From Fimbriosthenelais zetlandica (Eukaryota): a stretch of 64,000 nucleotides of DNA. Within the stretch, counting starts at the first letter, position 1, and each line of letters starts with the position of its first letter. Below the pieces are notes generated by a model. That model made no database searches, had not been told where the DNA came from, and worked only from the letters and a program-made list of their open reading frames with translations. The DNA is taken from assembly GCA_977030845.1 (NCBI GenBank), contig OZ365112.1:8370001-8434000 (forward strand), in the 5' to 3' direction. Below are positions 1 to 43,417 of the stretch, piece by piece. Made by a program: the position numbers and the translations under genes.

Positions 1-285
1 TGATCACCTTGATGCCACCACCTGATGGTACATTGGCAGGCTTGGCAGGTTCACTAGTCTTTGGTTTTTCTGCAGGTTTCTCCACAGGTTTCGGTTCAGC
101 TTTGGCCACACCATTCACCTGTGGATGCTGATGTCCGGGGTCCTTGACTACCTGTTCCAGAGCATCAAAGAACGCCTCCGGGCTGTGTTCCTTGATGGAC
201 ATCCTCTCCAAAGCCGTTTCCGGGTCTACACCTTCATCTGGTTTACTTGTGGGTGGCTTCTTAGGGCGAAGACGATCAAGTGGAT
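1..285 (-). CDS. Gene A exon truncated by the window edge (Lys/Pro/Glu-rich)
   Basis: aaatcctcag|DPLDRLRPKKPPTSKPDEGVDPETALERMSIKEHSPEAFFDALEQ...PKPVEKPAEKPK...; phase-1 acceptor; frame open to position 1. Confidence 0.85.
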
Positions 286-3200
286 CTGAGGATTTGTCAG
301 AAATACAAGAGATCAGCTTAAAGTCTATAATTATATACGTTATGAAGATTCCGTTTCTAAAGGAACTTTAGCAACGCTAAGTCTATGGCTAATATTTGTT
401 AAGCCGGGCCTCCACTGCTGCGATTTTGCTTGCGACACTGCTGCGACAAAGCTGACAACGTTGTGTAATAATAAAATTTATAAATTGTGGTTCAAGTGTC
501 CAAGGCCTTAAGGCCGTCCTTCAATGGTAAATTTATCATTGAAACACAAGCATAACCTTTTCGCAGACGTGTCGCAAACAAAATCGCAGCAGTGGAGTCC
601 CGGCTTTAGACTCCAGGTTAATCTGTACGTTTAACGATATTTGTACACAGTAATTACGCTCACCAATCTTCACTTCGTCAGGTTTATCAACGTGGCTCTG
701 AAGCCTCATGAAGGTCTTGGATGGGATATTAGTTCCCTTATAAGCCAGGTCACTTAAGGGAACATCCTTGGTTGTCCCCTCCTGGAGTTCCTTCTGTCTA
801 CGGGCGGCCTCTCCTGGGCTAAGGCTCCGACTACGATCTTCAAAATACAGAAATATAGCGTTTTTTACGAGCACCAAAATAAGAGTGGAAGGACAATTTA
901 TTGATATACCTATTATTTCTATGGTATCGCTATACATTTCATTATTGATACCGACTGAAGGGGATATTAGAATATTACAACACATAGAAAGAATTGATTT
1001 CATATATAAGGCCAATCACACAGATTAGTCAGTATAGGACTCATGGATGGAGAAGTGGAACAACGTCGAGGTTCAATGACTGCTCGTACCTTGGGTTAGA
1101 AAGGAAGTATTCGGCAACACAATAGTAGAAAGGGCATGAGACCACTTTGGAAGAACAGACGGCACATTACATAGAACTGACATGTGATACCAACTAAGTT
1201 TATGGCGATGGATTTAAGTTTAACTTTAGTAGGTACGACCGAATATTATTACCATGTATAGTTTCGTTGAAGCATTGGATTGAAGTAAATCTTTATTTTA
1301 CGAGATTTAGAAATCAATGTTCCATAAATCTTACATTGGCAAAGCATCACTATATGGCATCCTCAGTTTTAGTGCAAGAGCGTATTTTCGTACATTTTTC
1401 AATTTAAATAATGGCCTAGAAAGAGTCAAGCGTCAATTTTTGAGTTTGAATTCATGCTTGTGTATAGCATTAATTATTATAAATTAGGCTTCGAAGATTT
1501 CCTGCAATAATGTCCTATTGCTATTTGAGACTAACAGTACAATGGAACCAACATCCGGTGGAAACATTCATCCATACAATAAATGCCAGACATGTTTATT
1601 GGCAAGGGGATGTTTGAACAGGGGGCGGGCAGTTTTACAACTATTACAATCCTGCGAATTGTCATTCACGATTTAAGCTTAAATGACGAAGCTATACATA
1701 GAGGCAATATATCTCTGCAACTATTATTGCCTCAATAACCCTATTAATTTCTTAAATAACGTCTTTATAAAAATAGTTTATAAAGAATTGACACAGTGGT
1801 TAGTTGACCCTCTTGCCAATATAGACAAACGGTGAAGCAAAAATCGTGAAAAAAGGCATACCGGTAATATAAAGCATGGCTTTTTGAAAAGAAATCCATA
1901 GGCCATGCTTTATTTTGCAAAGAGAGACATGCTGGGAGAAAAGCGCGAAGAAGCGCAACAAATTGATTGTAACCATTTATTTGTGATAAATAATTAGATA
2001 CTCCAAAAAGGTTTAGATATATCATTCTCAAGATTCACCGTATTTTGGTTTCCGGCCGCGAGAGCTTCGTAGAACTTTAAGATGTGGTTTAGGACTCTTT
2101 GGCTCTGTTCAAAATTAAGAAAATCCTCGCTGTTCGTGCTTTGGATAATCTAAGCAAATGAATATTTTTAAGAAGCCATGCTGCTACATAAAACTTTTGC
2201 AAATGTTTGCTAATTAAAGTATCGAAATTAAATCGAACAAAATTTAAGTGGAAATGCGCTGAAAAAATGTTTAAATAAAAATGAGAGTGACAGAATGTAG
2301 GCCTATTATGCTACTGGATAAAGGGTAATGGGGATAGTATTGATATAGATCATTGTCATGCAAATCTATGTATTCTATTATTATTTCCTGGTCCTACTGG
2401 AAGTCTAACTTATCTACCTACATGGTTTAATGAAATACAAACAACTCAAAGGTATATAATAATATTATTTCTAATGCTAAACATACACCTATAGACTTGG
2501 TCGAGAATATAGGACAAGTCATGGGATTCAAGGACAGTACTGTAAGGGACACAATAGTTGAATTACAATGAATCGGGGGTCTATATTATACACCTGTGTT
2601 ACAAACAAGAATGTAGTACTTACCAAAGTCTGGGTCGGTACCGTCGACAGACCCTGAGTCCCTGCTAACAGACCTGCTCAGTCGGATGAAGGTTTTGGAC
2701 GGGATACGTTGGTTTTGACCAGAATCTGTATTGCAAAATAAAAATAAAATGACTTTCTTTCCTTAAAGCAATCTCAAATACACCCTCATGTCATTTTGGT
2801 GGAGGATTTGAAAATACCGTAACTAATTTAAATAAAATAAATATAATGAATTAAACTAAAAATTATAAAAATAATGGTTACTTATAAATAAAATGAATTA
2901 TGATCTACAAAAGGCACTAATACCAATAAGAAAAAGAACAAAATAATCTGAATGCACACTATGTCCTTATACTCATGCTAGGATTATCATCTAATTCCAC
3001 AGGCTTCAAATCTATACAATATTAATGTAATGTATATTAATTGTAGCTGTATATGTGATTGTAAATGTATTTATTTGGACTAATGAAAAAATAGTATACT
3101 TTGTTATGGGATGGGATCTTATTGTGTCAATATAAGGGTAATGGTTCTTATTTTTGGAGTTGAGGGAATTTGTACAGGGGAGACTTGCAATAATATTAAG

Positions 3201-6200
3201 GTAGCATTCATTAATCCAATCTTACATTTATAGGTAAAATTGTCATTGTTGATTTGGTTGTTTCCCATTATGGCCCATTACAATGGGCCTACTGGGATTA
3301 CTACATAGGCTAATTAAATATATTGAAAACCAGGGTGGGCTATTAAAAACCACAGGGTCACAAAATATGACTTTGTCGGAGATGACGTCACTGAAAGACG
3401 AAAAGGTCGCAGGTAACACGTGACAAACGGAGAAAACCAGACATAAAGTCAGAGACATGAAAAATTGGTTGAAGGAGTGATCGGTGGTGGGTTCCGGATT
3501 CAGCCGGAAGTAGAGTCGGTCACGTGGTCACGCACCATGGTAACCAGCGGGAGGTGGGCACAGCACACCACAATCTATGGTTTTACAAAATACCGTGTGC
3601 GTCAGTTGTCCCGAGTTCTCGCTCGATCGATTTGCGAACGACCGATACCCGGCCAGCCAGGTAATTGCGTTCGTCAAATTCTGTAGAGTTCTCACCATCT
3701 TCCTCCTCTGCTGAGGGCCTGAAACGTTCCCAGGGTGCACTGGGCCTGCTATCCACGGGTCGGCGTTTGTAGCGGGGTGGAAGGGCTTATAAAAGCCACC
3801 AAGTAAAATATTTACTTAAAATTCCAATTGACTCTTTGGCAACCAATATCTAATTCATTGCATACACTACTTTAGTTTACATTATTCAAATATCAAGAGA
3901 CATGCGAATGAAACTCAAAGTTAAAATGAGCCATTTGGCTGTGTCCATGTTTCATTATAGGCCTAATGGTCCCTGAACAATAAGACTACTCTTAGAAAGA
4001 AGAATTACTATAGCAAAATAAATATATTAAAAAGCGTTTTAGGCCTATTTCTAATTGCTGAGTTACACGCGTGAATAGAATGTAATTGCTTTGAGTTAAT
4101 TAGCAAACTATAGGCAAAGTATAGGCTTAAAATCGGCGACTTTCTCTTGCAGGCCTAATGAAGAATAGTACATGCATGAATGTGACGCGTGAGCTGAACA
4201 TACCTTGTCTCTGTGGCAGCTGTCTATCCGTGTCGCCTGTAATCACTGGTACTTTCCCCTGTAGGAAATCTTTCTCGTCAAACTCGTTAGAAGGTGGGAT
4301 GTACACGTCTTCGTCCCTCTTTCGTCGTTCCCAGGGCGCTAACTCTCTCTCCACTTGTTTTTTCGGCTCTAAAATCAAATATCAAATTGGATATTTAGAG
4401 TTTGATTATTAATCCGCATGGATCTAAAATGAACCAACTTTGAATAAATCATCTTTGATTGACCTCTCTGACCTTGAGCAATAATTTATTTTTCTAAGTG
4501 TGACTTCAAAATCACTTTGTTTACTTTGATACGTTTCACATTAAATGAACTCATGCAGTGCATCCAGATTGATCACAGTTCAGTGAATAATGTATAAAGT
4601 GACATTATTCTGATAGATAGAGGCATACTGTATATGAAACATTATGATAGGTGATAGCTTTGACAGCCATGACAGCTATACGTGACGCCTGAGAGAGGGA
4701 CACTGTCAACAGATCCGAGAATTGGATCTCATATCCGGCGGAAGTTCCATCAAGTCTGGCCTCTTCAAAAGTCAACGAACACTTCTGAAGTGTAGCGATC
4801 ATTGTTCTGCCTTTGTTTAAATATAGCATGTCACATAAAAGCTTTACGACTGTCACATTGCAGGGACACACCTTCACAGTGATGAATAGTCAAATCCATC
4901 TTGTTCTTTCTACCATTTATTGTGATATCAGGTACTAGTTCAGGCCTGCACATAATGTAATAGAAATTAGACATATTATAGAAGTATAATGGACAAAAGG
5001 GTGCAAAACAGGGGTTCTGAAACAGAATGGTGTGGCACTTGGATGCCATTATAGGTTTAAATAGTGCTTATAGGCCTACATTTTCTTCAAGGGACTACTC
5101 AGAAAGAAGTAATCTTTTTGCTAATTTTGTCATGTAGCTGCTTTCGGAATGGAATAATTTATACTCATGGGAAGATTATCCACAGGATAAAGTACACACT
5201 TTGGTTACGAGTAGTGGCCCAAGAAATAAGTTAATTCTTACAACAATACGTAAAATGCTTTGAATGATAGTAATAAAGCTCAAAAGTACCAGGCACAGGA
5301 GATCAAGTCCAATTGTGCGATATAATAAATTTAAAGACCTGACATGTTTAAGAGCCGATCTGATACGCTATGACTGTTAAATACCTTACATGGTGCACTC
5401 ATATTCAATGAATCTCCCGGACAATAGATATGTTAGGGTCTATTTATCAAACACGTCTTTGCACTACACCGTGTCCCTTTAATAGGGTGTACACATAACC
5501 GACCGTATGAATGATTGCTTGCAAAATAATGTAATGGCTGAAAATGATGATATACCTGGAAGAAAGTGAATAGTTCTCTTGTCTGGAAGCAGCATCGATC
5601 TCCAAGTCTCGGGAATGAACTTAAAGAGTGGTAAACAAGGATGAGAAGTTTTCAATGGGCCTCCGCTGCCGGTACTTCTTCTATCAGGAGACAATAACCT
5701 TTGTCTGTTAGCAGATTTTAACCAAGTTATCCTTGGTCTTCCTCTTTCAGGGTAAATAATGACCGTCGCCATTGAAACATATATCTCTTAAATACTCCTA
5801 TAGCACACTCTGATCATTCTTAAAGTTCATATATAATCCGTACAGAGAATATCCAAAATTTCGTTCGGTTCTAATAATTTGTCCAGATTTTAGTGAGTTG
5901 GGTGAGACGAGTTGTGTGGTTCTTTGATACAATAGACGAGTGCATGGACAATGAAGAGATGTGAAAGGCATGGACCTACACCAGAGTATGAGGCTCCAAC
6001 TCCCATTGTCCACCAATAAATAGGACTATTAATGTCCTATTGGGACAGGTCCTGACGCTGTAATCATTAATGAATTTAATGACCACAAAGCGCGGTATAC
6101 AGCATACTGGGAAAAGATGAAAAACTGACCCTCGTTTTTGTAATAAAAATACGACCACGAATGTTCCCTTCAGGACACTCTTTTAAAGCAAACTTGGCCA

Positions 6201-9200
6201 AGGTTATATTCTCCAGGAACTATTCAAATGGTATTTTCATATATTCTAATGAGTCTAATTTCCTATTAGTCTATTTTCCCATGCATCAATTGCATATTAC
6301 AGATCTGAGACTGTATGTATGTAAAAGCTATAATATGCTGATCCCGAGGGCCTAGGGCCATGAAATGATGGGAAAATGCTATGACTATTACTACTAATAG
6401 ACCGTAATGAAAACCTCGTTTATTAATTGGTTCCCATCAATTCTAATAAGTTCACATGTAGGAGTAACGGGCTCGTCTAAGTTTATATTCAGACTGTGAT
6501 GGAACGATATGACACATGAATCTATATATATATATACAATATGCCTACACTACAGCCCAGTTTGAGAACAGATGCAACAACACTGGTAAAAGGAGTAGAC
6601 ATGCACAAAATGTAGGACATCGGAGGGAACCTGGTTCCATCGCTTGATCAGGTTGTTGCAAGTGAATACTTTAGTCACTATTTGTAGAAAAGCGGTCAAT
6701 TACTAGGCTGTAGATGACCGCTTCGATGACGGCCTCGCCTTTCTATAGGTTGGTATAGCTTCTGTTGTACCGTTTCTACGAGACGGTAGTACCAGACCTA
6801 TAGAAAGGTTCGACCAATTGAGGGTCCTATCCACTAAGTATATCGTACAAGCTATACTCCTTGGTCTTCTTGATGTGAATGGCATCCTAGATGGATGGTT
6901 GGATGGGAGAGAACTTCCGCAAGAATAAACTTACCTCTGGGTGGGAGGGCGCTGTCCGTAGCACCGCCCAGGATGGGCACACGGCCCTGGAGGAACGCTT
7001 TCTCATCAAATGGTTCCTGCTCAACAGGGGGCGCCTCGTCCACCGGCTTTTTAGGCTTCTTCTTCCTGGGTCTGTTCACTGTAATGGTACCATAATATAA
7101 TGATATACTTAAGGGATTTCGGATTTGTTGTATCATTAAATCTGGACTTTTTCTATCATTAAGTCTGTATTGTATATTTGTTTGGGGGCGTCTACCCAAG
7201 TTTAAAAAAGTTGTCAGGAAGCCCAGGGAAGACGGGTTTAGGCCCGACTGCGCTAGCAGTTAATATAATTAGTTGTATTAACCATAGAATATGACATGAC
7301 ATGACATGGGGGACATGACATGGTCTTTGACATCCCAGTTAGCAGCACTGGGTGGAGTTATATAATATGAGGAGTGTATATATAGATGACTCACCAGGCC
7401 TGAGATCAGGCGTTCCACCTTTGACCATGGGTATTTGACCATGGAGGAAGGCTCGCTCGTCAAAGTTGCTCTCATCTGGCGGTGTCTCGTGGTCTTGTGA
7501 CACACGACGGGCCCACGCTGGCACTTCCTTAAACACTTTCGGTTCTAAATAAACCAACTCAAAATTAGTGCAATGTACATGAGCATATTCCACTTGACCA
7601 TTTCAAGGTAATGCACCTATAATTCATCCATGAAATAGCATTTATGCATATGATAAGATTGGTGTATTTTGGCGAAATTCAACAATAAATCATTAATCTA
7701 TGTTTAATTCAACTTAGATATTTTAAAGCTTTTATGATTGAAAAAAAAAATGTATCATGGGAATGCATTTGACTTAGTTTTATTACATGTCCGTGTATGA
7801 TGTTATTTGTTTTTCCATAATCTTCTGTACGGGATTCACATGTGTATTTAATCATCTAGTGATATACACTTCACCTAAACATGCATGTCTAGACAATACT
7901 TGCCATGTCTCTACATGCTACATGTTTAATACAGCCATTCATTCTTGAAATATTTGATAAAGCATCTAAATAAATAATTCATACAAGAAATTAAAGAACA
8001 TCATAAGCCTATATACAAATATTGGATACATGATGGCACTAAAGCACATTTTATGCACTTATATACATTGTCCCAACTCTATACTGAAACTATTCCCGTT
8101 GTAATTAACTGATCACGATTCTCTTTGAAGCAAAATAAGGTATCGAGCCTATCAGTTAAAAAGAAATAAAATAAAATTTTAAAAAATAATAAAAATAAAA
8201 CACTGCTATAGCTTTTCATGCTAAAACAGCATCCAGGATAGAATATCTTATCTTTGCTTGTCCATATAGACCTATAGATCTGCATGTGTATGTCTTGTCA
8301 CTCACAGGGTGAGCGGATGTGTAGAGTGAAATATTGTTGGCAAAGTAAAAAGAATCAAGCAACAGCCTACTCTACCTCTAGGGGCTCTAGGTTTGGCCTC
8401 ACCACTGATGACTGGTAACCGACCATCCAGGAAAGCTCCCTCATCAAACGGTTCCTGATTATCGTACTGGCGATCATCCTGCTGATCTTGAGCTGAATCA
8501 GATGAAAAAACTCATCTCAGCTGCTGACCATGATCAAAACATGATTAACGAAGTCAACAATGAACGAAACAATGAAACAAAACGTTCAAATAACAGTTGC
8601 CACACAGGGAAATGAACAGTGACATTCCTTTCAAATTTCCTAGGCATAGCAAACAAGCAAGTTTATATAGGCCTACTGTATAGGAATTATTATATTCTGA
8701 ATATAGTTTGTATTCATTCTTTTAAGGAAGAAGCAATGCCTTTTTTTTTTAATTAAAAGTAAACTTCAACTTTGTGATCCGGAAGAATTCATGCATCGCA
8801 TAATAAATAAAACTAGCAGAAAAGTTGCAATTTCAGGTCATTCAATGAAATATCACTGTCCCTTTAGAAACATAAAAAATGTGACAACTGTACATCAAGT
8901 CAAAACAAAACAAAAAGCTAGGAACAACAAGACAACGAACAACCTACAAAGCACCTAAGTCCCATAACCTTGTGACAGTGCTGCCACCTACTGGCGAACC
9001 TAGAACCCTACCTGCCATATACGCCGCGTGGTGTTCAGCCTTGGCCAGAGGATCCACAAAATCTAGCGACGCTCTTCGTTGTGCCATTTGTTGGAATTCA
9101 TATACTTTTGGCTTTTCCTCTTCTTCAACACAAAAGACGGAGGGACAGGACAGGATAAACGTGCAAGATTAGAATATGAAACTAGTGACAGGTACAAGAG

Positions 9201-12200
9201 GTGCAAATTGATACAAACAGACATTTAGGAAGGAAATTAGGTACTTAAATGTCGCTTATTCATTTATATAAAATATTTAAATATTATCTTATTTCGTTGT
9301 ATTTAGATAGAGATCATTTCCTGCTATCCACCATTATTTATGTGCCTGAGATGCAGGCCTAATACGGTGTTAGAGGAAGGTTAAAGTAGAGATTAAAGAT
9401 TGAAATAGATTGAAGATAAAAGGCATAGAAATGTCAGACAGGCTTTCACTCCACACATTAGAGTAAAGGTTTAAAGTGTAAGAATTTATAAACGTCAACG
9501 TTAGTCTACATAAAGGAAGTATTCTATTCTACACAGTACATAAAGTGTTAAGGAAAGTGTGCATGTTCATGGGTTAGTTTTAAAGATTTAAAGAATAACA
9601 AGAATGTAGTTTTATGAGAACAAAAATGATGAAAGTTCGAGCCCCTAATTGTAATTGTCTATATGAAGCTACATGGTTAATCCGTAACTGAAAATTGTTG
9701 TGAAAAGTGCAGTAGAGATCTGTGCAAGACTACCAAAATCTACCTTGATTCCCATAGTCATCTGCACATGGAAATTAGACAGTGGTGAATGCATGAAATA
9801 ACACCGACGTGAAATAACATCAAAATAACATCCGTGCAATCCAATATGACTGCGTCTAACATATATATCCTATTGGGTAAATAGTGAATGGACTTTTCCT
9901 CTAAGATGAATATCAGTTTGTGAATGGATTAGAGTTAGTTCTGTACCTTTCTTTTCTATCATTGGTCGAGGTGCTACTGGTGTATCATCAAATATAGCCA
10001 CATTGCCCGATAAATATGCACGCTCATCAAAATCTTTGGGTTTGGTCGGCACCTCCTCCACATCTATATACTGATTAGCAGCCTTCTCTGTTTGAAGACA
10101 AAGCCAAGCAGGACAAATATAATAACTTAACCTTCTATACATATCATCATCTTGCATTACTTTATTATGGCTTTTCGAATCAGAGTAGGGACTATTATTT
10201 TCTCTCTACGATGCTTCTGCATAACGACCTTTTCAACAGCAATGATTAGACCTTTTTGTTAGATATTGGAGAGGCATGGTCGTGGCTTTCGGCGGGGTGG
10301 TGGACAAAAAAGTGGTGGGTTGGTCGGGGGAAGGGGAGGGGGGTTGGAGTTCGGCAAATTGAAGTTGATACCTGTTTCAATTCTTTCACTTCGTACTTAA
10401 CATAGATGGAAAAATATCACAAATGAAATAATACTATAATTATTATCAAACATATTCTGACAATGGCATATTTACCGAATTTAACTGATATTGACTCATG
10501 AAACGTTTCACAAGTAAACCTAATGCAATCAATATTGATATAAAAACTTAGACTAAGAGAATACCTCCATTGCATCCATCATTTTTCACAGATTAGAACT
10601 ATTAAAACTGTTGGTAAAACTCACCCTGTTCTCTTTGACGATCTTGAGCAAGCTGAGATGTTGATCTCTCGAAAGCACGTTCCCTCTTTTTCCGATCGAC
10701 TGTTCTTGCCCAGTCAGGTTTGGCACTGAACTCTGTCAAAAGATTTTGTTATTTCAAATCTGGCGTTCTAGTCTTATGATAGTTTGTTAGGAAACGAATA
10801 CAGTTACAGACCCTTATTCAATCAAAGCCTTATTACTTTAATAATATATATAAGAATATTTATTCATTTCAAATGTAGAAAGGGGATTTATTTGAACAAT
10901 TTAACCATCATTCTCAGTATCAAACCCAGATGTATAGCTCTCCATATCAATACTGTAGACATGTATCATCTTCAATGAGGAAATAATGTTCCTGCATGAC
11001 CTCAGGTTCAGGTTATTGGGTCCATTTTGTGAGGAGATACAGTATAACTAATACTTTAGTTTTGGATTTACATAATGATACTATCATCCAAATTACCCCC
11101 ACCTCCGGCTAACTGGGTTATCAAAGATCAGCCATGCCTCCCTTTGTCTAAGGTAAGAGGCATGTTCCATCAATTGTTGTTTGAAGACAGCTGTGCATGG
11201 ATAGATATGGATACAGAATCTTTCATCTTAAACTGTTTAAAACCCATTGAATCCAATAGAAGGAGTGCGTACCTTTCTTCCTGGGGACGCGAGGGGGAAG
11301 GTTTGTCTCGCTGTCAGGGTCGTTTATGATGCTCATTTGACCGGCTAAGAACGCCTTCTCGTCGAAAGTTTTCTCCGCCTCCTCGGGCTCTTCCTTCTCC
11401 CAAGCCGCTTTAGGCTTGTTCCCACGATTGGGAGCCACTAGAATTAACGGAAGTTCTTTATTAGATCTAGTACATATACAAAATGAAATTATCGAAGCGT
11501 AAAAAATAGTGTCATATTGACCAAGGCTAGGATAGTGCAGATATATTTTTGTCTGCATTCAGTAGAAAGAATCACAAGACAAGCACAGCTCAGTGGGTGA
11601 CTGAGTATTGGGAAGCGAAGAATAGAGTTTAGAAACCCACCCTCCAATGTTCAATAGCAGTAACAGTTCATTTAAAAATTCGTTTAAAAATTCGAGATTT
11701 ATTTTATTATGAATGCCTGTTATTAAAAGAAACCTGCGAGGGTTCACAGAGAACATGTGATGATCTCTGGGAAGTCCGTAAAGAACATGCACAAACAAAC
11801 ACAGAAAGTGAAAGCAGGGGAAAGGTGTAATAGGATGGTAGACATCAAACCCCAAGGAACGATCTGTGAGGATAGGACGAGGAATTACATAGTAGATAAA
11901 CACAGCTAAACAACACCATGTAACATTAGTTCTGTAGAATTAAAAACCTTAAGGCCAAGTGGTCCCAACAACTTTGTGGCAGTTCTACCACAAAATTCTA
12001 AAAGGAGGTAGAATTCCCCCAATTCCAGCAGGACTCACATGGCCTTATGCCTCAAAAAGTTATGCAACACTTTAACAATAAAAGCTTGTTTCAATGGGAT
12101 TAACTGTTTTAATATATTTTAACCTGATTCTGAATATTATTATCAATATCTGTTTTTTTCATTTGCTAATGCAGCAGTCATGTCTTAGCATCATTATTAA

Positions 12201-15200
12201 ATAATGCAGTTGGAAGCATGGCGACTACACACATAGCAGACTACATTAGCACCTACATAATTATATAGACCTATAATTATTAGCTAAAGCACACACGCTT
12301 TTATCTACACAATCTAACACCTTTGATGGCAGCAGTGCTTCCACCCCACACGGGTTCCTCTCCACGCAGCCATTTCCTCTCATCAAATTCACGATCCTCA
12401 GGTCTGTTCTTTAGTAACCTATCAGCTTCGTGTAGCTCGTGTTCGTCCGCTGCTTCAGTGATAGTCTTTCTATCTATTATGTACACACATAAAGCGTCTG
12501 TACTATGAACTAAAATTTATATTTAACTATAAACTCGAAATAATCAATAGAAGGATTTGTCTACTGATATTTCTGAGAGACTATAATGTAGTTTCCATGG
12601 TTGGAATTGAACGCTAGGATTGGGTGCTAATAATTTCATGGGTGGACTTGGTTATTTGGACAGACTTGGCAATGAGTCAACGCCCTACCCGTCATCCTCA
12701 ATTTGTCCCTTTCCACACCTATCGCCCTCCCTCCTCTCTCCAGTCATATTCGCCCCTTTCCACAGCTATCTACCTCCCTCCTCTCTTCTGTTTTATTCCT
12801 CCCTTTCTGCAGCTATCTCCATCCCTCGTCTCTCCTGTCTAATTCATCAAATCCTACACGTAATCCTACAGCCATCACCCTCCCTGCTCTCGTCTAATTT
12901 GCCCCTTTCAACGGCTATCTCCCTCCCTATTCTCTCCTGTCTAATTCCGCCATTTCTACAGCTATCTTCCTCCCTCCTCGATGCTGTCTAATTTGTCCCT
13001 TTATACTGCTATCTCCCACCCTATTCTGTCCCGTCTAATTTGTCCTTTCTACTGCTATCTCTCACCCTCCTCTTTTCTATCAAATTCGTCCCTTTCTACA
13101 GCTATCTCCCTCCCTCCTCTTTTCTATCAAATTCGTCCCTTTCTACAGCCAACCTCCCTCCTCTCTTCCCTCCTCCCTTCGCCCCTTTCAACGGCTATCT
13201 CTCACCCTCCTCTTTTCTATCAAATTCGTCCCTTTCTACAGCTATCTCCCTCCCTACTCTCTCCTGTCTAATGTGGCCCTCTCTACAGCTATCTCCCTCC
13301 TTCCTCTATCCTGTGTAATTCGCCCCTTTTTACAGCTATCTCCCTCCATCCTCCCTCCCTCCTCCCTCCATTCTAATTCGCCCTTTTCTAGAGCTGTCTC
13401 ACTCCCTCTCCTCCTCTCCCACCCTCCGCTCTAATTCGCCCCAGATAATGAGACTGACTTGGAAAATGGCCAAGATGTCCATGGATGGATTTGGTTAGTT
13501 GAAATGACAAATGGTAATTTGCCAAGACATAGATGGTTGGACTTAGTTAACTGGTCGGAGATGGTCATAATGAACTTTGTTCTCTTCCTCCATGGGTGAA
13601 AATAAGAAAACCGTGACCTACATAATAAACAAAATTTAAAAAAAAAAATCATAATTAATTTACGTATACCTCAACTAAAGTAATAATCCACCAAAGAGCC
13701 AACTGAAAGTCAACCTTAACTTACCCACTGGCTGTGCCTTGACCTCATCCTCTGATCTGACTATGGGGATTCGACCAGCCAGGTAGGCAGCTTCATCAAA
13801 CTCGTCTCTCTTGGCTTCGTGTGGAGGCTCTCTAGGAAGGACGGGGCGACGCTGCGGTGAAGGCGACATTGTCCGGGGCAGGGAGCCTCGTCGTCGCCGG
13901 CGACGTCGCTCGCGAGCAGCTTCAAAGATCAAACACAAGGCATTAAAGATACAGAATGAGATTCTTGATGCTTTTTTTTAGTTTTCAAGTAAATTATTTT
14001 TCATTTATCTGTTACTATGAATCAGGACCAGCAGTAAAGACCTAGACTTATATCTAAACCCAGAGAAGAGGAAAATATTATTTTTTCATGAGATAAAGTG
14101 GAAATTAATGATCTCTAAATAAATCCTCGATTATGAGCAATGAACCTTGCTTTACAATTTATATATTATCAGTCTTGGAAGAAATCGGAATTTAAAGGTA
14201 GCCTATGCAAAATCATGGCTTGGAGGGCCTTTCGTTTGGCAAAGGGTTCGAGGGGCATACATCTGTTGGGTAAAGGGCCCATTTCTTGTGGAGAGGTCTA
14301 TATCACTCATACCTGCATGTGGGTCTCCTGGGTGGGGTCTGGAGTCAGAGGGCGCCACCACCATCGGTTCTTCCATGCCATTGGTCACACCAGAATCTGG
14401 ATTGAGTGACATCATCAAGACGTGTGTATGACGTCACAAGTTGGGAGGTGACAGTACCAAACCAATGAGCAATGCACAGCAACCAAAACAAACGATAGAT
14501 TCCAGCTACTGGACTTCTCACAAGTGAATCTCTCAGATTAATATAAGGTATTTGTGATTTTTGTGGCTATTTCCTGTCAGGTTGGATATAGAATCATTAT
14601 GGTACATTGGTTTTTCATTACAGACCAATAAAAGGACACTGAGTTACACAACAAATGAGTATAATTATGTGAGTCACATGAATTATGGGGGAAATTACAT
14701 TAGGCCTACATTCAAAAAGGTTGTTGGCGTATACATTAAAACAGTGGGCCACGACATAAAGATCGATTTTTATTGGCAAAACACTTACAAATACAATCAC
14801 AAAGTCACAAAAATAATGCTGAAATATTTCTCCAGCAAAAGGACAAAATAGCAAGGAAAGGGCTGCTGTATTAACACACTGTTGTAGAACAAAATATATC
14901 CTTAGCTTTACAAATCTTATTCTAAATTACTTAGGAAATAAATACGATTACAAAACTAAACATAGTGGTGTAACAAATGCACAACATAAATACTGAACAA
15001 TGCAGAGGGTTATGCAGGTTAGAACAATAAACGTGGATATCTGAAAATATGCACTCTAGCTGGTGGTGGGATCCATGCATGCAAATTGAGTACATTAAAT
15101 GTGGGGTCAAGGATAAATAGCTAGTTACAATAATACTTATGTCACATTATTTTGGTCAGCAGTGTCTTTTCTATCCAACTTATTGTGCTGGACTGGTCCA

Positions 15201-18200
15201 TTGAACAAGTAAGTGCTGAAGCAGATTCCACTGAATTGCACTAAATATATCTTACTGAGTAAAATATCATACTCATAGGATACTATAGACACATTGAACA
15301 GTCCGAAGTAAGATTATTATATAATTCAGTCCAATAAGCCACTCTCAAATTGCACCTCCTTTGAGAATAGCCAAAGCAGTGAAAATATATTCACAAGCAA
15401 GTCTACAGTCAAAATTCAGTCCTCAGTTTCGATATCTTGGTCCGATCTTGCCAGGCTAACAACTGGTTGACAGGACGGCCATGTATTTAGGGCTTGATTA
15501 AAAATCGGTGACACAATCGTCATGAGTGCGGTAGGATCGGAGGATGGCAGGTGAGGGGGCTTTAGGTGGATGGTTTGACCGTAAGGTCACCTTCCTGACC
15601 TTACGGCCTTGACCTTCCCTATGTGGTCGACCTTCTGGTGGCCGGTGATTGGGTTCTGTGGAGAAAGCAGAGCTAGGGCTAAACACATGCTTTCCAGTCC
15701 AAATTAAAACAGTCTGAGCTTTCACAGGAGCATAAAACCCACTTGCACAGGTCTGCCTGCAAGGAATGGGCAGACGTTTGGTGTATAATTTGTTTCTGGT
15801 TTGGTCGTGAGAAAATGAAATAAAAAACAGGCAGACTGAGTGCAGTTGGGACTAAATGTCTGATGCTCGTATGTGTAGCTTTTCTGAGTGAAATTGGACT
15901 GAAAACCACATGCAAATAATCAGATGACATGAAGCAAACGTTTTGAATTTCACAGAGCGTATACTTTGAGTGTGACTATTTTCATATAATATTCCTCGAT
16001 AATTTTATGTATAAACTAAAGAGAGCGAAAGAATCAATTTGAAAAATACTACAAATTTACCAAAAAGTTTCACTAACTCTTCTAATGAAAAATACTCTAT
16101 ATGTACACTATATGCTATTCTCATGATCAGAAAAAAGTTCCATGCCTTGCCATTACAACATTCACCAACTTCCCATAATTGAAGTAAAGAAACTACATAG
16201 GAAATGATGCTGGCAAGGCAATTTTCATTATAAATTCTGTATTAATACTAATCTAGACAGAGTATTCTGCTTTCTCTGAATATCAACAAGTCTGTCATAC
16301 GTTTGCTTCAGCCATCTTTAAACGAAATTTGTAACGACCCCATGCAACAAAAACTTCTACTAAATTTATATATTAGCGTCAACTTAAAAACACACACACA
16401 AAATAATTAAGATATAATCGAACATTACTTAGAACTCGTGGTAAACTTTGTTGGTCAAAATAAAGAACATTCTTGAAGTCTAGAATCTATTATGATCCTT
16501 ATGCACAAGGTAATTGGGTGCGATGGAAATGGTCAAAACTTCAAACTTTGTGTAAGTTATTTCATGCGTTTTGAACTGGTTGAACAGTCATGCTTTATCT
16601 TACCATAGTCTGATGGATCAGCTCCAATGGACTGTTGAAGCATCCGGAAGCTTTTGGATGGGATATGGCCACCAACGTAACTAATATCAACACCTCCATC
16701 CCTATCCTCATCTTGTGGACCAGGGGCTGACTCTGCACGCCTCAGATGTCTTCTAGTTGGCTTGGCAGAAACTTGAAAATGTAACAAAGAATCGGTCAAA
16801 ACTTACAAGCAGTTACTTACAATTCCCTTATAACTAGACTCAGAAATGCATTCCTGCTTTAGAATACAACAATGACACAATTAGTAGAAAAAGTCATTTG
16901 TGCTTAAAACTTATGTACATTCAAAGATTTGTGATAAAATCAGTTAGGTTTTGACCACTTAGTAAGTGAACAAGGATATGAGATGGAGAGAAGGCATTTT
17001 ATGATTTCCCTTAACCAACGCATTCAGAGCAGGTTAGCTTAAGTAAAACTTGTAACTTGTAAAATCTAGTAGAAAGTTTAATAGCCTTTACCCACTGTGT
17101 ATATGGGCTTAGAGCTCAATATATTTTGAGTTGCAGGCAACCACTTCAATGATGCATTTGACTGCAAAGCCTATATGAAAGCCCCTATGCACAATGGATA
17201 ATGGCTGTAACCTCTATCCATTGCGCGGCTTGCATATGGCCTAGCAGTTCAAAGTTCAATGCTTACAAGAGGCATCTGACTGCAACCCCTTTCAAAGCAT
17301 CGAGCTGAAAGGTCATTGCAAGCCCGTATACACAGTGGATAACAGCTAACGATTAAAATGATCCGTAAAGGCCGTAAGCTTTGCTTAGCGTCTGCTGAAC
17401 GTCTGCTGCCTGTCTCACCTGGAGGTAAATCATCATCATCGCCGCCTGTCATGGATTTAAGCATGCGGAAAGCCTTGGATGGGATACTGCCACCTTTATA
17501 GCGAATCGAGGCCTCGTTATAGTGGCCAACATCGTTATAGTCATCATCATCATCTGGAAAGGAGTTGGCTGGGTGAGGCAAGAAGGGAAGCATGCGGCAA
17601 ATAAACCCATCATGTTAAACGTGTTAGAAGTGGTTAATAGCCTGAACCCACTGAGCTACGATCTCCCTATGCAGTCTGCTTTACGATCGAATTACAACAA
17701 ACATTTTAAAAGTTCGTTGAATGAACCAACTGAAGAAGTATGTGGAATGAACCTACGATCATGTTGTTGTGTGCTCTTCATGGATCAGAACATTGTTATT
17801 TGAGCATGTTCAACCAGATCATTGTTATTTTGAGCATGTTCAACCAGATCGTAAGGATATCGTTGGAGATCGTAGCTCAGTGGGTTCAGGCTATTACTTA
17901 CATGCTTTTATGGTGGTATTAGGGGAGGCTAAGGTAGAAAGGAAGAAAGCTAGAATGTCTGCCCAACAAAATGAAACTGCGGAAGATAGTAAGGAAAGCA
18001 AGCATTGACTCAGTGAGCCACTGTGTAACCACATGAGTCTCATATGGCCTTAGCTAGTTACGATATTTCGTATAAATGCTAAATTGAAAAAGAAATAATA
18101 GAAGCTGGATAGGGAGTTTATATAGGTTCAATTTTGAACTATAGCAGAATTATAATGAAGTAAATTAAAAATAAAAGAAATGATGAAGACGTCATTTCCG

Positions 18201-21200
18201 TGAACTGAAGTTGTGAGATAAAGGATTGCTTTTCTAATCTACTAAACGTGCAAGACAGATAGATATAGAGAGATTATTTCACAGAAAAATATTCACTTTC
18301 GTCATCGCTCGACAAAGAGATTTATAATTTCAAAAATATTGAAATTTAGAATCAATGACATATTAGACAAATCCTTAAAGGAGACTGATTTTACAGTGTA
18401 AGAGTATTATATGAAATGATACAGGAACGGTTATGGTATTCTTGGGTATTTTCAGGGTTGAGATGTGCTGCAAATCCAGAGTGAAACTCAAAAATAAAGT
18501 TGGTTTTGAACAGCTTTATCGATGAAAAATAGGATAAAAATTTACCTCCTGTCACATTGGTCCTGATGGAGGACCTATCTACTTCACTGCCTCCTGTGAG
18601 GGACGCTAGTTTTTGGAAGGCCCTGGACGGGATGTGGTCATACGTATCAGCTCTACTAACTCCACTGAATGAAGTCTCATCATCCACAGAAGGCTGCCGA
18701 TGTGGTGAACGAAAACCTAGTACGATATCATACATAATCCAATCATATTTACTGGTAAAGGCAAAATGAAATGAAAACGAGCATGTCTTGTAATACGAAG
18801 CTCATAAAATGTACAGTGTTGAATGTGCTGAGTATGAATTCAGGGTCATTCACGGGGGCCTAATTAGGGGCTTTATCTCACCAAAAAGAGACATATTAGA
18901 GTTTGGAAGATAAACGATCACACATTGATGCAGTGTTATTAATATGGAAACTCTTCGTCACATTCCTATTTCTAAGCATGTAACTACCAGAACTTGAAGC
19001 CAGAACATCAGAACCAAGGAAATTATGTAACACTCCATGCCATCAAATAAAATAACTAACAAACAGGTACTGGTCTGTTTTATACTACAAAATTGCTAGA
19101 AATCCGCAATGGGATCCTTTATAGTCTGTCCAGAGGTTGTATTGGTAAAAGTACCCACCTCTGTGTCCATGCTGAACAAATCTTGCATTGGGGCAGTTTG
19201 GGGAAAGACTGCCATCACTACTAGTATCATGGATGCTGCCGGGGTAACCAGGGGTGGAGGACAATGAGCCAGATGTAGAGGGTACAGAACTGACGGGAGA
19301 CACAGAACCAGAACCGGAAGTGACTGCAGCCAACACCGGTCGATGACCACCACCACCATCCTGGTCTTCATCATCATACAAACACTGGAGAACCAGGAAT
19401 GAGAGTCCTTGCCGAGCCTGGCCTCCTCGGCTCAAACCAAGGCCACCTCGGCTACTAGAGATTGGAATGTTGTTAGGGTGGGGAGAAGAACCATGGTGAA
19501 CAATGACAGGGTTAGTGTTGTCACTCTGGGGTTGTAAACATGCAGGGTGTGGTGCTGGGATGATGACAGTGGCTGTTGTACCTTCTGAGCCTTGTCTCTG
19601 TGGAGCGGCAGGTTTAGCTGCTGGTGGTGGTTCGTCCAGTCCGTGAATCATCTTGTACACTGCAGACTGTGTGATGTCTGGTCCACCACTAGGCTTCCTA
19701 TGAGTAGGTATAGTTCATAAGTAAATGTCCAAATGAGTACATATTATGTTATGCATTGCAGAGAGAATGTAGTAGTGTATATACAATAAAAATCTAGCTG
19801 TATCATTTGATTATACATATTTAAATCTAAATACATGTCTATAGGAATAGAGTAGCATGAAAATGTAGCATTTGAACAGAGCAATTGGCTAATGAGTATA
19901 TTCAATGAGGGCTGAATGAGATTTTGAATAAAGGTCATCAGGAAAGTTGACCTTGTGGGAAGCATCGACATTGATTTGGAGAACGCCATGGGATAGTCAA
20001 ATGGTGAGTCAGGAGCCCTCATTGAATTATTGTTGACATTCTTTTAACACAAATACATGGGATTCACTGACTAGGATACAAAAGAATAAATAAGAGAAAA
20101 GGTATTGAAGTCCACATATATACAAGTCAAATGAAAGTCAGAGCTTGCTACCTTGTCGAGTATTTCACTTTGTCATGCCTTTACGGTTCAAATATAATAT
20201 ATTTTCATACAAAAAACAAAAGAGTAAACCTAAACCTGACATTCACGTGCTCAGCAAAAGAAATGAAACAGAAATCTTGAATACCCATTCCGAACTGAGC
20301 TATAAATCTGGTAAAATAAACAATGATTTTACCGTCTTGACCTTGACCGATTAAGAAAGCAGAAAAAAATATGTCGATTAGATCTATCTGTATTTTACAA
20401 GACTAGTTTGAGATGAGCAGTATAGATAACATGCTGGAATGAATTATGAATGAATGAATCTGAAAAGCAAGACTAAGGTGTAGAACGTCTACAGTTGCCC
20501 AAGACCTAGAAGTACAGTACTGACACCTAGTTTGTCATTTCAAAGGCTTCTATAGTGTTTGATTGAATAGAATTGTGACTGGGTATTGTCTTGTCAGTGG
20601 TCGTGTGAATGAGGCAGCAATCGGAGCAGGAATTGGTAGCTTGGGTGCAATGAGATAAGGTTAACAAGTACATGCAAAAAGAAAGAGAAAGTGTACTGGT
20701 GAGTGTAGGTCAATCCGTAGCATTCATATACTATGCCAAGACTTTCCATACTTGAAAGTTTCCACAGCATGGAGACAGAATCTGGGACAGGATCGTTTTC
20801 AGAGGGATTTACATATTTAGACGAAAGGTTTTACAAATCTTGTAGGGACTGGACATTTTGATCTTTGGTTCACGAAGAGCACATCATGGAAAGATATGGA
20901 CCACTGCATACTGTCACACTAGATTTCACTTGATATCAGGCCGTAAGATTTAAAGTCTCTGAAGTTCCTGTTTCCAGAGCAGGTTGGTTGACTATGATAT
21001 GCCAATCCTTCACAATTGAAAATCAAGATGAAAGGAGGCCTACAAGCCCAAATTGGACTAAAAAGGTGAGAGATTGGAGGGTAATTCGACGATTCATTAC
21101 AAGTTATGTTTCGTATACATAGTCTGAACACCGAGAAGTCGGAACGGCATTCGCCAAATTTTCAGTAACTTTCAATAGGCTTCGTGCACCGGAAGTGACG

Positions 21201-38764: not shown

Positions 38765-38872
38765 GGCTTGACCAGCAGACAATAATTAATAATCACAAGG
38801 AACAACAAAGGCACGATCCACCTCCAGTCTTGTGCGGAACTCCAGTTGGTAATTCCTCCAGGGTGTGAGCGG

Positions 38873-43038: not shown

Positions 43039-43297
43039 GTCTCCGCCCTGGCTGGGGATTCATGGTGGAGATGGGAGGGGGAGGGGGTTGTGGAGGGGAG
43101 GTGTAGGAGTTGTTGTAGGGGGCAGCAGTGTTGCCTTGCCGCCTTCCTGCCTCCAGCATCCGTCGGTTGTTGCTGTGGCTAACTTCCTTCGTCCCTGTAT
43201 CTCGGCCTCCGCCGCCGAACATCGGCCCCGTGTGTGGTGGTGGGGTGGGATGGAGTGAGAGAGAAGGAGAGAGAGCCGGGCCCACACACTTGACACC

Positions 43298-43417
43298 ATG
43301 GCTTCTGGCCCGTACAAAGAGCACGGGGTCTCTCTCCAGAGGGACACGCTCAACACCCCGTGGGGATTTCGTCTCCAGGGTGGCAAGGACTTCAAGGCAC
43401 CACTGACCGTTCAGAGG
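43298..43417 (+). CDS. Zasp: Gene B exon 1, PDZ N-terminal half
   Basis: accATGG; MASGPYKEHGVSLQRDTLNTPWGFRLQGGKDFKAPLTVQR|gtaggt; 120 nt; phase 0. Confidence 0.95.

What the first reader, a model, noticed from the sequence alone, without database searches (positions are those of the whole stretch)
4204..13919. Nine exon-encoded copies of an unassigned repeat, FDExA[FYW]LxGxxP, in a Zasp-family protein
Seen: eight clean copies (EFDEAAYLAGRIPIV, EFDERKWLRGEEPVW, TFDEKAFLAGQMSII, DFDERAYLSGNVAIF, PFDEGAFLDGRLPVI, NFDERAFLHGQIPMV, PFDEKAFLQGRVPIL, EFDEKDFLQGKVPVI) and one degenerate copy (HHAAYMAGRV). Each sits alone in its own 117-195 nt phase 1-1 exon, and the flanking residues are divergent, which points to old exon duplications with selection on about 14 residues. 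Established: Zasp/PDLIM proteins are Z-disc scaffolds that bind alpha-actinin through PDZ/ZM, and titin Z-repeats are alternatively spliced alpha-actinin-binding modules. I do not recognise this motif from vertebrate PDLIMs or fly Zasp. Inference: a lineage-specific, splice-tunable multivalent binding array, possibly setting partner valency or Z-disc architecture.
Basis: partly seen in the sequence, partly recalled or inferred. Interest (0 to 1): 0.9.

Follow-up and report, generated by a model that had tools for sequence, protein, structure and literature searches.

The report
Unnamed repeated motif in worm Zasp
A muscle Z-disc scaffold gene of the Zasp/PDLIM kind carries nine one-per-exon copies of a short conserved peptide, FDExA[YF]LxG, that no domain library names, that all named carriers (annelid worms) share, and whose binding partner is still unknown.

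Summary
A tenth peptide, EFDERNYLAGRVSVV (3634-3678), lies just outside the range. That gives nine strict copies, against none in shuffled sequence.

Each copy sits alone in an AG/GT-bounded exon of 117-195 nt with phase 1 at both ends. Joined together, the exons stay in frame.

The "degenerate" copy is doubtful. Its last residues (RV) are probably intron read-through, and its orthologue does not keep the motif.

A related genome (ERZ25767047) has the same exons in the same order with the same splice phases. Synonymous sites are saturated (pS 0.78) while pN is 0.24, so the exons are under purifying selection.

Transcript-like contigs from relatives join half a PDZ domain, ZM-like motifs, six to eight FDE copies and a LIM-less tail ending in -VTDF in one reading frame.

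Pfam, PDB sequences, the ESM Atlas and the papers searched give the motif no name. An exhaustive profile search found 39 true carriers. The three named by cluster look-up, plus a Capitella protein from a second search, are annelid "hypothetical proteins".

AlphaFold2 models the array as disordered, with a five-residue helix at each motif. It most likely works as a multivalent linear-motif array. Partner and alternative splicing are untested.

Other notes of this scan cover this same stretch only, not other DNA.

The parts
13725..13919 (-). Exon c1 (195 nt, phase 1-1): Arg-run, then EFDEAAYLAGRIPIV
   Evidence: The orthologue in L003 (804-995) is 81% identical in protein, with AG/GT at homologous positions.
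12321..12473 (-). Exon c2 (153 nt, phase 1-1): Trp subtype, EFDERKWLRGEEPVWGG
   Evidence: The acceptor was placed by the L003/L004 orthologue. P0029, P0016 and P0034 are the same subtype in other species.
11273..11437 (-). Exon c3 (165 nt, phase 1-1): AAWEK ... TFDEKAFLAGQMSII ... LPPR
   Evidence: Orthologues are P0037 and L003 4213-4326.
10625..10732 (-). Motif-less cassette-type exon x3b (108 nt, phase 1-1): PDWAR ... KRERAFERS. Possibly a decayed copy.
   Evidence: Found as a 76% nucleotide-conserved block. It is 87% identical in protein to L003 4975-5088. Boundaries.
9947..10087 (-). Exon c4 (141 nt, phase 1-1): DFDERAYLSGNVAIF
   Evidence: Orthologues are L003 6819-6950 and P0017.
9012..9122 (-). 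Exon c5 (111 nt, phase 1-1): YEFQQMAQRRASLDFVDPL ... HHAAYMA(G). A decayed copy at best.
   Evidence: The donor CAG|gtaggg at 9012 matches the orthologous donor in L003. The orthologue reads HEEAERLMN(G). The conserved part is the upstream YEFQxxAQRRASxDFxDPL.
8376..8492 (-). Exon c6 (117 nt, phase 1-1): PFDEGAFLDGRLPVI
   Evidence: Orthologues are P0025 and L003 10007-10108.
7395..7544 (-). Exon c7 (150 nt, phase 1-1): PAWAR ... NFDERAFLHGQIPMVKGGTPDLRP
   Evidence: The same subtype (KPFDERAYLAGRIPLV.GG..D) occurs in P0001, P0002, P0047, P0048 and P0049.
6935..7078 (-). Exon c8 (144 nt, phase 1-1): RPRKKKP ... PFDEKAFLQGRVPILGG ... LPPR
   Evidence: Orthologues are P0007 and L003 14366-14506 (64% identical).
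4204..4368 (-). Exon c9 (165 nt, phase 1-1): APWERR ... EFDEKDFLQGKVPVI ... LPQR
   Evidence: Its best matches are P0008, P0011 and P0009 in other species.
3594..3785 (-). Exon c10 (192 nt, phase 1-1): APWERF ... EFDERNYLAGRVSVVRKSIEREL.
   Evidence: Its best match is P0019. It is collinear with the last FDE unit of P0047 and P0048.
38651..38785 (-). First PDZ exon of the same gene (VWLQRPGEDVPWGFRLQGG...). Coordinates are those of the open frame.
30645..30839 (-). Second PDZ exon. Coordinates are those of the open frame.
   Evidence: Pfam PF00595 scores 35.7 bits against a cut-off of 23.2. It is collinear with the start of P0047.
21443..21742 (-). Open frame holding the DUF4749 / PDLIM signature AQYNSPLSLYTEDNV
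   Evidence: PF15936 scores 27.9 bits, just under the cut-off of 28.7.
16560..18801 (-). Three ZM-like S[KR]xFxxL exons upstream of the array (motifs start at 18633, 17485, 16664)
   Evidence: They are collinear with the ZM motifs of P0047 and P0048.
2..2762 (-). Two ZM-like exons (motifs start at 2705 and 727) and the helical tail exon (367-2, which runs off the window)
   Evidence: The order is the same as in P0001, P0002, P0006, P0047 and P0048.

Best explanation
The 3.6-13.9 kb block is the central, intrinsically disordered part of a Zasp/PDLIM-type Z-disc scaffold gene on the minus strand. The gene order is PDZ, DUF4749, three ZM-like motifs, the FDE array, two ZM-like motifs, then a helical tail. 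No LIM domain is present in the window or in the relatives' transcripts.

The block consists of about eleven small symmetric (phase 1-1) exons. Nine of them each encode one copy of a conserved unit of roughly 45-55 residues. The core of the unit, F-D-E-x-A-[YF]-L-x-G-[RKQ]-[IV]-P-[ILV]-[VLI], is predicted to form one short helix followed by an extended hydrophobic stretch, inside otherwise disordered, charged linkers.

The most likely working is a beads-on-a-string array of short linear motifs. Each copy would dock the same surface of a Z-disc or thin-filament partner (candidates: actin, alpha-actinin, a LIM or PDZ domain of a Zasp paralogue). The number of copies, and hence the valency and reach of the scaffold, could be changed by exon skipping without breaking the reading frame.

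Shown: the motif, the exon structure, the conservation, the gene context and the predicted disorder.
Inferred: that the motif binds anything, what it binds, and that the exons are alternatively spliced.
For: Repeat is real: 9 strict copies against 0 in shuffles.

Exon structure: one motif per AG/GT exon, all phase 1-1, and the concatenation is an open frame.

Orthologous array: two contigs of ERZ25767047 carry the same exons in the same order. Nucleotide similarity is confined to exons (70-76%), and splice sites and phases are kept.

Selection: pN is 0.24 against a saturated pS of 0.78.

Age: every window copy has its best match in another species.

Expression and gene membership in relatives: P0001 (1820-nt Logan contig), P0002, P0047 and P0049 are uninterrupted reading frames holding 5-8 copies each. 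P0047 begins inside the PDZ domain and is collinear with the window gene.

Disorder with a local helix: in AF2 models each of the 6 motifs of P0001 forms a 5-residue helix at E-x-A-Y-L, the linkers have pLDDT under 50, and pTM is 0.17. The single-unit model from 72 aligned copies has pLDDT 72, with helices at the core and at WERR. The Atlas model of the Capitella protein has pLDDT 0.41.

Conserved positions beyond those used to pick the copies: Ala at +4 in 58/72, R/K/Q at +9, I/V/L at +10, Pro at +11 in 39/72, and the downstream P-R.

Precedent for multivalent motif-based assembly in this family: ZM-LIM binding and LIM-less 'blocking' isoforms in Drosophila (PMC6910826), and a spliced disordered Zasp52 exon needed for thin-filament anchoring (PMC13521563).
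Against: No RNA from this species was available, so inclusion of these exact exons in mRNA, and any skipping, is unproven. No binding test of any kind was possible, since the tools have no multimer prediction. The motif matches no known actin-, actinin-, LIM- or PDZ-ligand family in Pfam, so the partner is a guess. Conservation of a short aromatic/acidic motif in a disordered region would also fit self-association or a regulatory docking site. The window does not reach the 3' end of the gene, so LIM-bearing isoforms cannot be excluded.
Confidence: 0.55

Rival explanations
1. The motifs are homotypic 'stickers'. They would bind another part of the same protein family: the PDZ domain, the LIM domains of the neighbouring paralogue, or each other. 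This would drive oligomerisation or condensate formation of the scaffold rather than recruit an outside partner.
For: The array has aromatic/acidic cores separated by charged disordered linkers. The same protein has five ZM-like motifs. ZM-LIM self-association is the known growth mechanism in fly Zasp (PMC6910826). The relatives' proteins end in -[VI]TDF, which looks like a class I PDZ ligand (the reading as a PDZ ligand is my inference).
Against: Nothing shows self-binding. The AF2 whole-protein model shows no contacts between motifs or with other parts (pTM 0.17), though single-chain models of disordered proteins are weak evidence.
Confidence: 0.2
2. The motif is a docking or regulatory site for an enzyme or trafficking factor (kinase, phosphatase, protease, chaperone or degradation machinery), repeated to raise avidity. 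It would not be a structural link in the Z-line.
For: It is a short linear motif in a disordered region with a conserved helix-plus-extended shape. A neighbouring exon keeps an RRAS site between species, which hints that the region is regulated.
Against: Nine or ten copies kept separately for longer than synonymous saturation is unusual for an enzyme docking site. I compared the motif by eye with the FFAT, LIR, PxIxIT and LxVP consensus patterns as I recall them, and it fits none. This is from memory, not a tool test.
Confidence: 0.12
3. The motif belongs to a domain or motif class that is already described but absent from the libraries reachable here (for example ELM, SMART or InterPro-unintegrated entries, or a paper not in the held library).
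For: Only Pfam-A, PDB sequences, the ESM Atlas and open-access full text could be searched. The named carriers are merely 'hypothetical protein'.
Against: There are no Pfam hits at E<=1 for ten exon translations and six multi-copy proteins, no PDB hit, and no Atlas family. No paper was found with the Capitella locus tag or on annelid Zasp motifs. The annelid muscle paper that used zasp as a marker does not mention it (PMC5167519).
Confidence: 0.08
4. The 'exons' are not expressed coding sequence. They would be chance open frames, pseudo-exons or repeat-derived sequence.
For: No transcript data exist for this species. The exon boundaries are predicted.
Against: Shuffles give 0 copies. pN is far below pS. 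Splice sites and phases are conserved. Nucleotide conservation is limited to the exons. Relatives have uninterrupted multi-copy reading frames on short transcript-like contigs.
Confidence: 0.02

Closest known systems
Drosophila Zasp66 / Zasp67 and LIM-less Zasp52 isoforms ('blocking isoforms', ALP/Enigma family)
   Same: An N-terminal PDZ of the PWGFRL type, ZM-type motif(s), a long disordered remainder, no LIM domain, many small alternatively used exons, and Z-disc scaffold function based on multivalent motif-domain contacts (PMC6910826).
   Different: The window gene has five ZM-like motifs instead of one, plus nine FDE units. The paper calls Zasp66/67 insect-specific, so the LIM-less state here is probably independent or an isoform.
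Titin Z-repeats
   Same: Both are units of about 45-55 residues, repeated in tandem in a Z-disc protein, with a short helical binding element in a flexible context. For titin, the one-unit-per-exon layout, the differentially spliced copy number and alpha-actinin binding are from my own knowledge.
   Different: There is no sequence relation: no Pfam family was hit at E<=1. The host protein differs. The partner of the FDE motif is unknown.
Zasp52 exon 15e disordered region
   Same: A spliced, disordered region of a Zasp protein, lying after the ZM motif, that is needed for thin-filament anchoring and for keeping Zasp at the Z-disc (PMC13521563).
   Different: The fly region is one long exon without a described repeated motif, and deleting its one putative actin-binding motif had no effect. 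Here the region is an array of a sharply conserved motif.
Nebulin/nebulette simple repeats, and WH2 arrays (Spire, Cobl, SALS)
   Same: Tandem short modules, each thought to contact one actin subunit through a short helix, joined by flexible linkers (my own knowledge). This is a functional analogy only.
   Different: The SDxxYK and LKKT/V signatures are absent. The Pfam nebulin and WH2 models were not hit.
FATZ/myozenin
   Same: A disordered Z-disc protein that binds alpha-actinin through linear motifs and forms condensates (my own knowledge). This is an analogy for rival 1.
   Different: It is an unrelated sequence without a tandem array.

Membership tests
ALP/Enigma (PDLIM/Zasp) family | N-terminal PDZ domain of the PWGFRLxGG type | tested here: met
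   PF00595 scores 35.7 bits (cut-off 23.2) on 30645-30839(-). PWGFRLQGG lies at 38719(-).
ALP/Enigma (PDLIM/Zasp) family | DUF4749 / ZM region after the PDZ | tested here: inconclusive
   PF15936 scores 27.9 bits, just under the cut-off of 28.7, on 21443-21742(-). Five S[KR]xFxxL motifs resemble the ZM core. No ZM model could be run on its own.
ALP/Enigma (PDLIM/Zasp) family | One to four C-terminal LIM domains | tested here: not met
   No LIM-like Cys/His pattern was found in any frame of the window. The related proteins P0001, P0002, P0006, P0047 and P0048 end in -TDF, and the related protein P0049 in -STDF, all without LIM. The gene runs off the window at base 1, so LIM-bearing isoforms remain possible. 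LIM-less members and isoforms are accepted in this family (PMC6910826).
Any Pfam-A family for the FDE unit | Profile match at or near the gathering score | tested here: not met
   There were 0 relevant families at E<=1 for ten exon translations and for P0001, P0002, P0004, P0005, P0006 and P0023.
Titin Z-repeat, nebulin repeat and WH2 (known Z-disc or actin tandem modules) | Sequence match to the family profile | tested here: not met
   All are Pfam-A families and none was reported at E<=1. No PDB chain scored better than E=2.9.
Short linear motif / MoRF array in a disordered region | Conserved core of under 20 residues, local secondary structure only, and low-confidence flanks with no tertiary packing | tested here: met
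   In AF2 models there are 5-residue helices at all six motifs of P0001, linkers have pLDDT under 50 and pTM is 0.17.
Short linear motif / MoRF array in a disordered region | Demonstrated binding partner | not testable with these tools
   No multimer prediction or experiment was available.
Alternatively spliced cassette array | Symmetric exons whose skipping keeps the frame | tested here: met
   All 11 exons have lengths divisible by 3 and are phase 1-1. The same holds in the orthologue.
Alternatively spliced cassette array | Transcripts that differ in exon content | not testable with these tools
   No RNA data for this species. The transcripts of relatives come from different species (59% identity between P0001 and P0047), so their differing copy numbers prove nothing.

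The most novel reading that the evidence does not exclude
FDExA[YF]LxG is an undescribed, annelid-wide (possibly wider among lophotrochozoans) ligand motif. It would give a LIM-less, multi-ZM Zasp a splice-adjustable valency of up to nine for a core Z-line component such as actin or alpha-actinin. That would be a third way, besides PDZ-actinin and ZM-LIM contacts, in which this family builds Z-structures, perhaps tied to the Z-rods of obliquely striated worm muscle.
Probability: 0.35. Interest if true: 0.65.

Novelty: new variant of a known kind. Interest (0 to 1): 0.5.

Why it matters
ALP/Enigma/Zasp proteins are core Z-disc organisers and human myopathy genes. Their known working parts are PDZ, ZM and LIM. 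Here a member of the family carries a fourth, sharply conserved and highly repeated element that no library names.

The element has been kept copy by copy across species whose synonymous sites are saturated. That makes it a clean, testable candidate for a new Z-line interaction. It also gives a natural system in which scaffold valency could be set by exon choice.

It is so far confined to annelids. The function is unknown. It is a new motif in a known kind of protein, not a new kind of system.

Tried and rejected
1. Pfam on all ten exon frames and on six multi-copy relatives gave nothing relevant. The only hits were YibX (E 0.054) and ATP-synt_E_2 (E 0.01), both chance.

2. The PDB sequence search with the repeat profile gave only a bacterial flagellin-hook 'DEAKFLAGN' at E 2.9, which is chance.

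3. ESM Atlas searches on one exon and on the Capitella array gave best scores of 0.74 and 0.72, below any useful level.

4. Three hits of the big profile search are false. P0010 and P0021 are unrelated tandem-repeat proteins. P0042 is a bacterial FDEQAYLAGNPDVAAA repeat.

5. The search for homologous proteins with the alignment A2 and with P0047 returned only the same handful of proteins. Low-complexity words filled the candidate list, so mollusc or other phyla could not be probed further.

6. Paper searches found nothing on the motif. The terms covered Zasp, the ZM motif and splicing; the Capitella locus tag; Zasp in annelids and Platynereis; and Zasp66/67.

7. A long intronic inverted repeat was noted by another reader on this stretch. 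At seed 11 and length >=25, only one weak pair appeared (6235-6263 / 9770-9798, 72% complementary). This is a coarse test and was not pursued.

8. I considered FFAT, LIR, calcineurin PxIxIT/LxVP, a calmodulin-type 1-5-10 helix, the alpha-actinin EF-hand 1-4-5-8 helix and WH2. Compared by eye with consensus patterns recalled from memory, none fits: charged residues fall at positions that must be small or hydrophobic, and Gly-x-x-Pro sits in the middle.

9. The organism could not be named. Other notes of this scan call the genome 'annelid-like' or 'probable mollusc'. All named relatives of this gene are annelids.

Full report
**Observation**

The strict pattern FDE..[FYW][LM].G occurs nine times in the 64-kb window, always on the minus strand between 3.6 and 13.8 kb. 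It does not occur at all in 30 shuffles of the window.

**Exon structure**

For each copy I looked for AG acceptors and GT donors around the open frame. The exons are:

| Exon | Coordinates | Length (nt) |
|---|---|---|
| c1 | 13919-13725 | 195 |
| c2 | 12473-12321 | 153 |
| c3 | 11437-11273 | 165 |
| c4 | 10087-9947 | 141 |
| c5 | 9122-9012 | 111 |
| c6 | 8492-8376 | 117 |
| c7 | 7544-7395 | 150 |
| c8 | 7078-6935 | 144 |
| c9 | 4368-4204 | 165 |
| c10 | 3785-3594 | 192 |

An eleventh exon without the motif (x3b, 10732-10625, 108 nt) came to light as a conserved block. All eleven have lengths divisible by three and phase 1 at both ends. Their concatenation is one open frame.

**The degenerate copy**

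The orthologous exon in a related genome ends at the same place and reads ...HEEAERLMN(G).

What the two species share in this exon is the upstream YEFQxxAQRRASxDFxDPL. The exon may be a decayed copy, since each species keeps a different half of the motif. It is not under selection for the motif now.

**Gene context**

The same strand carries, from 5' to 3':
- two PDZ exons (38785-38651 and 30839-30645; PF00595 at 35.7 bits);
- a DUF4749-type signature (21443-21742; 27.9 bits against a cut-off of 28.7);
- three exons with a ZM-like IPS[KR]xFxxL motif (18.6, 17.5 and 16.7 kb);
- the FDE array;
- two more ZM-like exons (2.7 and 0.7 kb);
- a helical tail exon that runs off the window at base 2.

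No LIM pattern occurs in the window. A second PDZ gene starts on the plus strand at about 43.3 kb.

**Relatives**

I built a profile from the ten exon translations (A1) and ran it with HMMER over 1.84 billion representative proteins. It gave 42 hits at E<=0.001. Three are false: two unrelated tandem-repeat proteins and one bacterial FDEQAYLAGNPDVAAA repeat. The rest carry the motif.

The named hits are "hypothetical proteins" of the annelids Paralvinella palmiformis and Ridgeia piscesae. A further search added Capitella teleta CAPTEDRAFT_224947, which has about ten copies.

Four multi-copy proteins sit on short contigs as uninterrupted reading frames, so they are spliced transcripts:
- P0001: 477 aa on 1820 nt, six copies (five strict plus one FNE variant);
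- P0002;
- P0047: 733 aa on 2423 nt;
- P0049.

P0047 begins in the second half of the PDZ domain. It then runs through a conserved middle region, a ZM motif, eight FDE units and two ZM motifs, into a tail ending NEVTDF. It is collinear with the window gene from 30.8 kb to 0.1 kb. This shows, in a relative, that the FDE units are expressed and belong to the PDZ-ZM protein, and that this isoform has no LIM domain.

**Orthologous locus and selection**

Two contigs of ENA assembly ERZ25767047 (loci L003 and L004) hold the same exons in the same order: c1, c2, c3, x3b, c4, c5, c6, c7, c8. Nucleotide similarity to the window is confined to the exons (70-76%), and the introns do not align. At the homologous positions the orthologue has AG and GT with phase 1 for every exon examined.

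Over 355 aligned codons, pN is 0.24 while pS is 0.78, which is saturated. That means strong purifying selection. Identity is 75% in the 15-residue core and 63% in the flanks, so between orthologues the flanks are constrained too.

For each of the nine window copies, the best-scoring relative among 72 units is in another species, not in the window. The duplications therefore predate these species, and each copy has been kept separately. Subtypes are recognisable across species:
- a Trp subtype, FDExxWLxGxxPVWGG (c2);
- KPFDERAYLAGRIPLVxGGxxD (c7);
- a type with upstream APWER and downstream RxSV[DE]RELPPR (c9, c10).

Two further loci from other assemblies (L005, L006) again show one motif per small open frame.

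**The unit**

From 72 non-redundant units (A3) the consensus is as follows:
- an optional A-P-W-E-[RK] (W in 26 of 66);
- 8-14 mostly acidic residues;
- [E/P/D]-F-D-E-x-A-[Y/F]-L-x-G-[R/K/Q]-[I/V]-[P/S]-[I/L/V]-[V/L/I]-[G/R]-G;
- after a few more residues, often L-P-P-R.

Some of these columns were fixed by the pattern used to pick the units (F/Y, D, E, aromatic, L, G). The Ala, the basic residue, the I-P-L-V stretch and the P-R were not.

**Structure**

AlphaFold2 on one unit with the 72-row alignment gives pLDDT 72, a short helix over E-K-D-F-L, a second helix at W-E-R-R, and coil elsewhere.

On the whole of P0001, each of its six motifs forms a five-residue helix. The linkers have pLDDT below 50 and pTM is 0.17, so there is no sign of a folded repeat domain. 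The Atlas model of the Capitella protein has mean pLDDT 0.41. The array is best described as a disordered chain with short helical recognition elements.

**Is it known?**

Nothing names it:
- Pfam-A gave nothing for the exons or for the multi-copy relatives.
- PDB sequences gave nothing.
- The Atlas gave nothing above 0.74.
- Full-text searches found no paper on the motif or on the Capitella locus.
- The Platynereis muscle paper that cloned zasp uses it only as a marker (PMC5167519).

ELM, SMART and InterPro could not be consulted.

**How it most likely works**

The anatomy is that of a multivalent linear-motif array inside a Z-disc scaffold. The family already works by multivalent contacts. 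The PDZ domain binds alpha-actinin. The ZM motif binds LIM domains. LIM-less isoforms act as blockers of Z-disc growth in flies (PMC6910826). A spliced disordered Zasp52 exon is needed to anchor thin filaments (PMC13521563).

I therefore commit to the following reading. Each FDE unit docks one copy of a Z-line or thin-filament component. The copy number sets avidity and reach. The symmetric exons allow that number to be changed by splicing.

The steps that are shown are the motif, the exons, the selection, the expression in relatives and the disorder. Binding, the partner and alternative splicing are inferred. The rivals are self-association (stickers), an enzyme or regulatory docking site, and an already described motif that I could not reach. 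Non-coding artefact is excluded by the data.

**Verdict**

This is a real, conserved, unnamed repeat in a known kind of protein. So far it is seen only in annelid or annelid-like sequences, though single copies elsewhere would have escaped the search threshold. I rate it a new variant of a known kind, of moderate interest.

Other notes of this scan (s1-191786, s1-191799, s1-191773) concern this same stretch, not other DNA.

Noticed in passing
It is the last FDE unit before the downstream ZM-like exons.
   Followed up: yes
window 10625-10732 (-): A motif-less phase 1-1 exon (EFSAKPDWARTVDRKKRERAFERSTSQLAQDRQREQ) is 87% identical in protein to the related genome, the best conserved exon of the block. 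It keeps the W motif and an 'ERAF' remnant, so it may be a decayed FDE unit with a new constraint.
   Followed up: partly
window 9012-9122 (-): Exon c5 keeps YEFQxxAQRRASxDFxDPL between species. RRAS fits the basic-kinase (PKA-type) consensus, so this may be a regulated site inside the array.
   Followed up: no
window 12680-13440: A 47-nt minisatellite (at least 13 copies, CT-rich on the plus strand) fills the intron between exons c1 and c2. It explains the strong negative GC skew of 12-14 kb.
   Followed up: partly
relatives P0001, P0002, P0006, P0047, P0048, P0049 (C-termini): The LIM-less proteins end in -EVTDF, -EITDF or -ESTDF. This looks like a class I PDZ ligand (T-x-F), similar in type to the alpha-actinin C-terminus that PDLIM PDZ domains bind (my own knowledge). 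It could allow head-to-tail self-binding or competition. The window ends before its own C-terminus.
   Followed up: no
window 13880-13917 (-), and the same place in L003, P0030, P0032, P0047, P0048: A run of 5-7 arginines opens the first FDE exon and is kept in several species. It may be a basic patch or a nuclear-localisation-like signal.
   Followed up: no
window 5482-5787 (-): An open frame with GRPRITW and FKFIPETWRSMLL...RTIHFLPG has an 80-nt block that is 74% identical to L003 19308-19383. It is either a retroelement remnant shared by both genomes or another small exon; this is unresolved.
   Followed up: partly
window 15649-15701 (-): A conserved polypyrimidine tract plus acceptor and a few codons (81% identical to L004 1623-1679). 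Possibly a micro-exon between the third ZM-like exon and c1.
   Followed up: no
window 43259-43468 (+) onward: A second PDZ gene of the same PWGFRLQGG type starts head-to-head with the first, about 4.5 kb from its first PDZ exon. It carries no FDE motif on the plus strand.
   Followed up: no
P0042 (JGI metagenome protein): A bacterial protein has tandem FDEQAYLAGNPDVAAA repeats that mimic the first nine residues of the motif. This is a chance look-alike that profile searches will keep picking up.
   Followed up: partly
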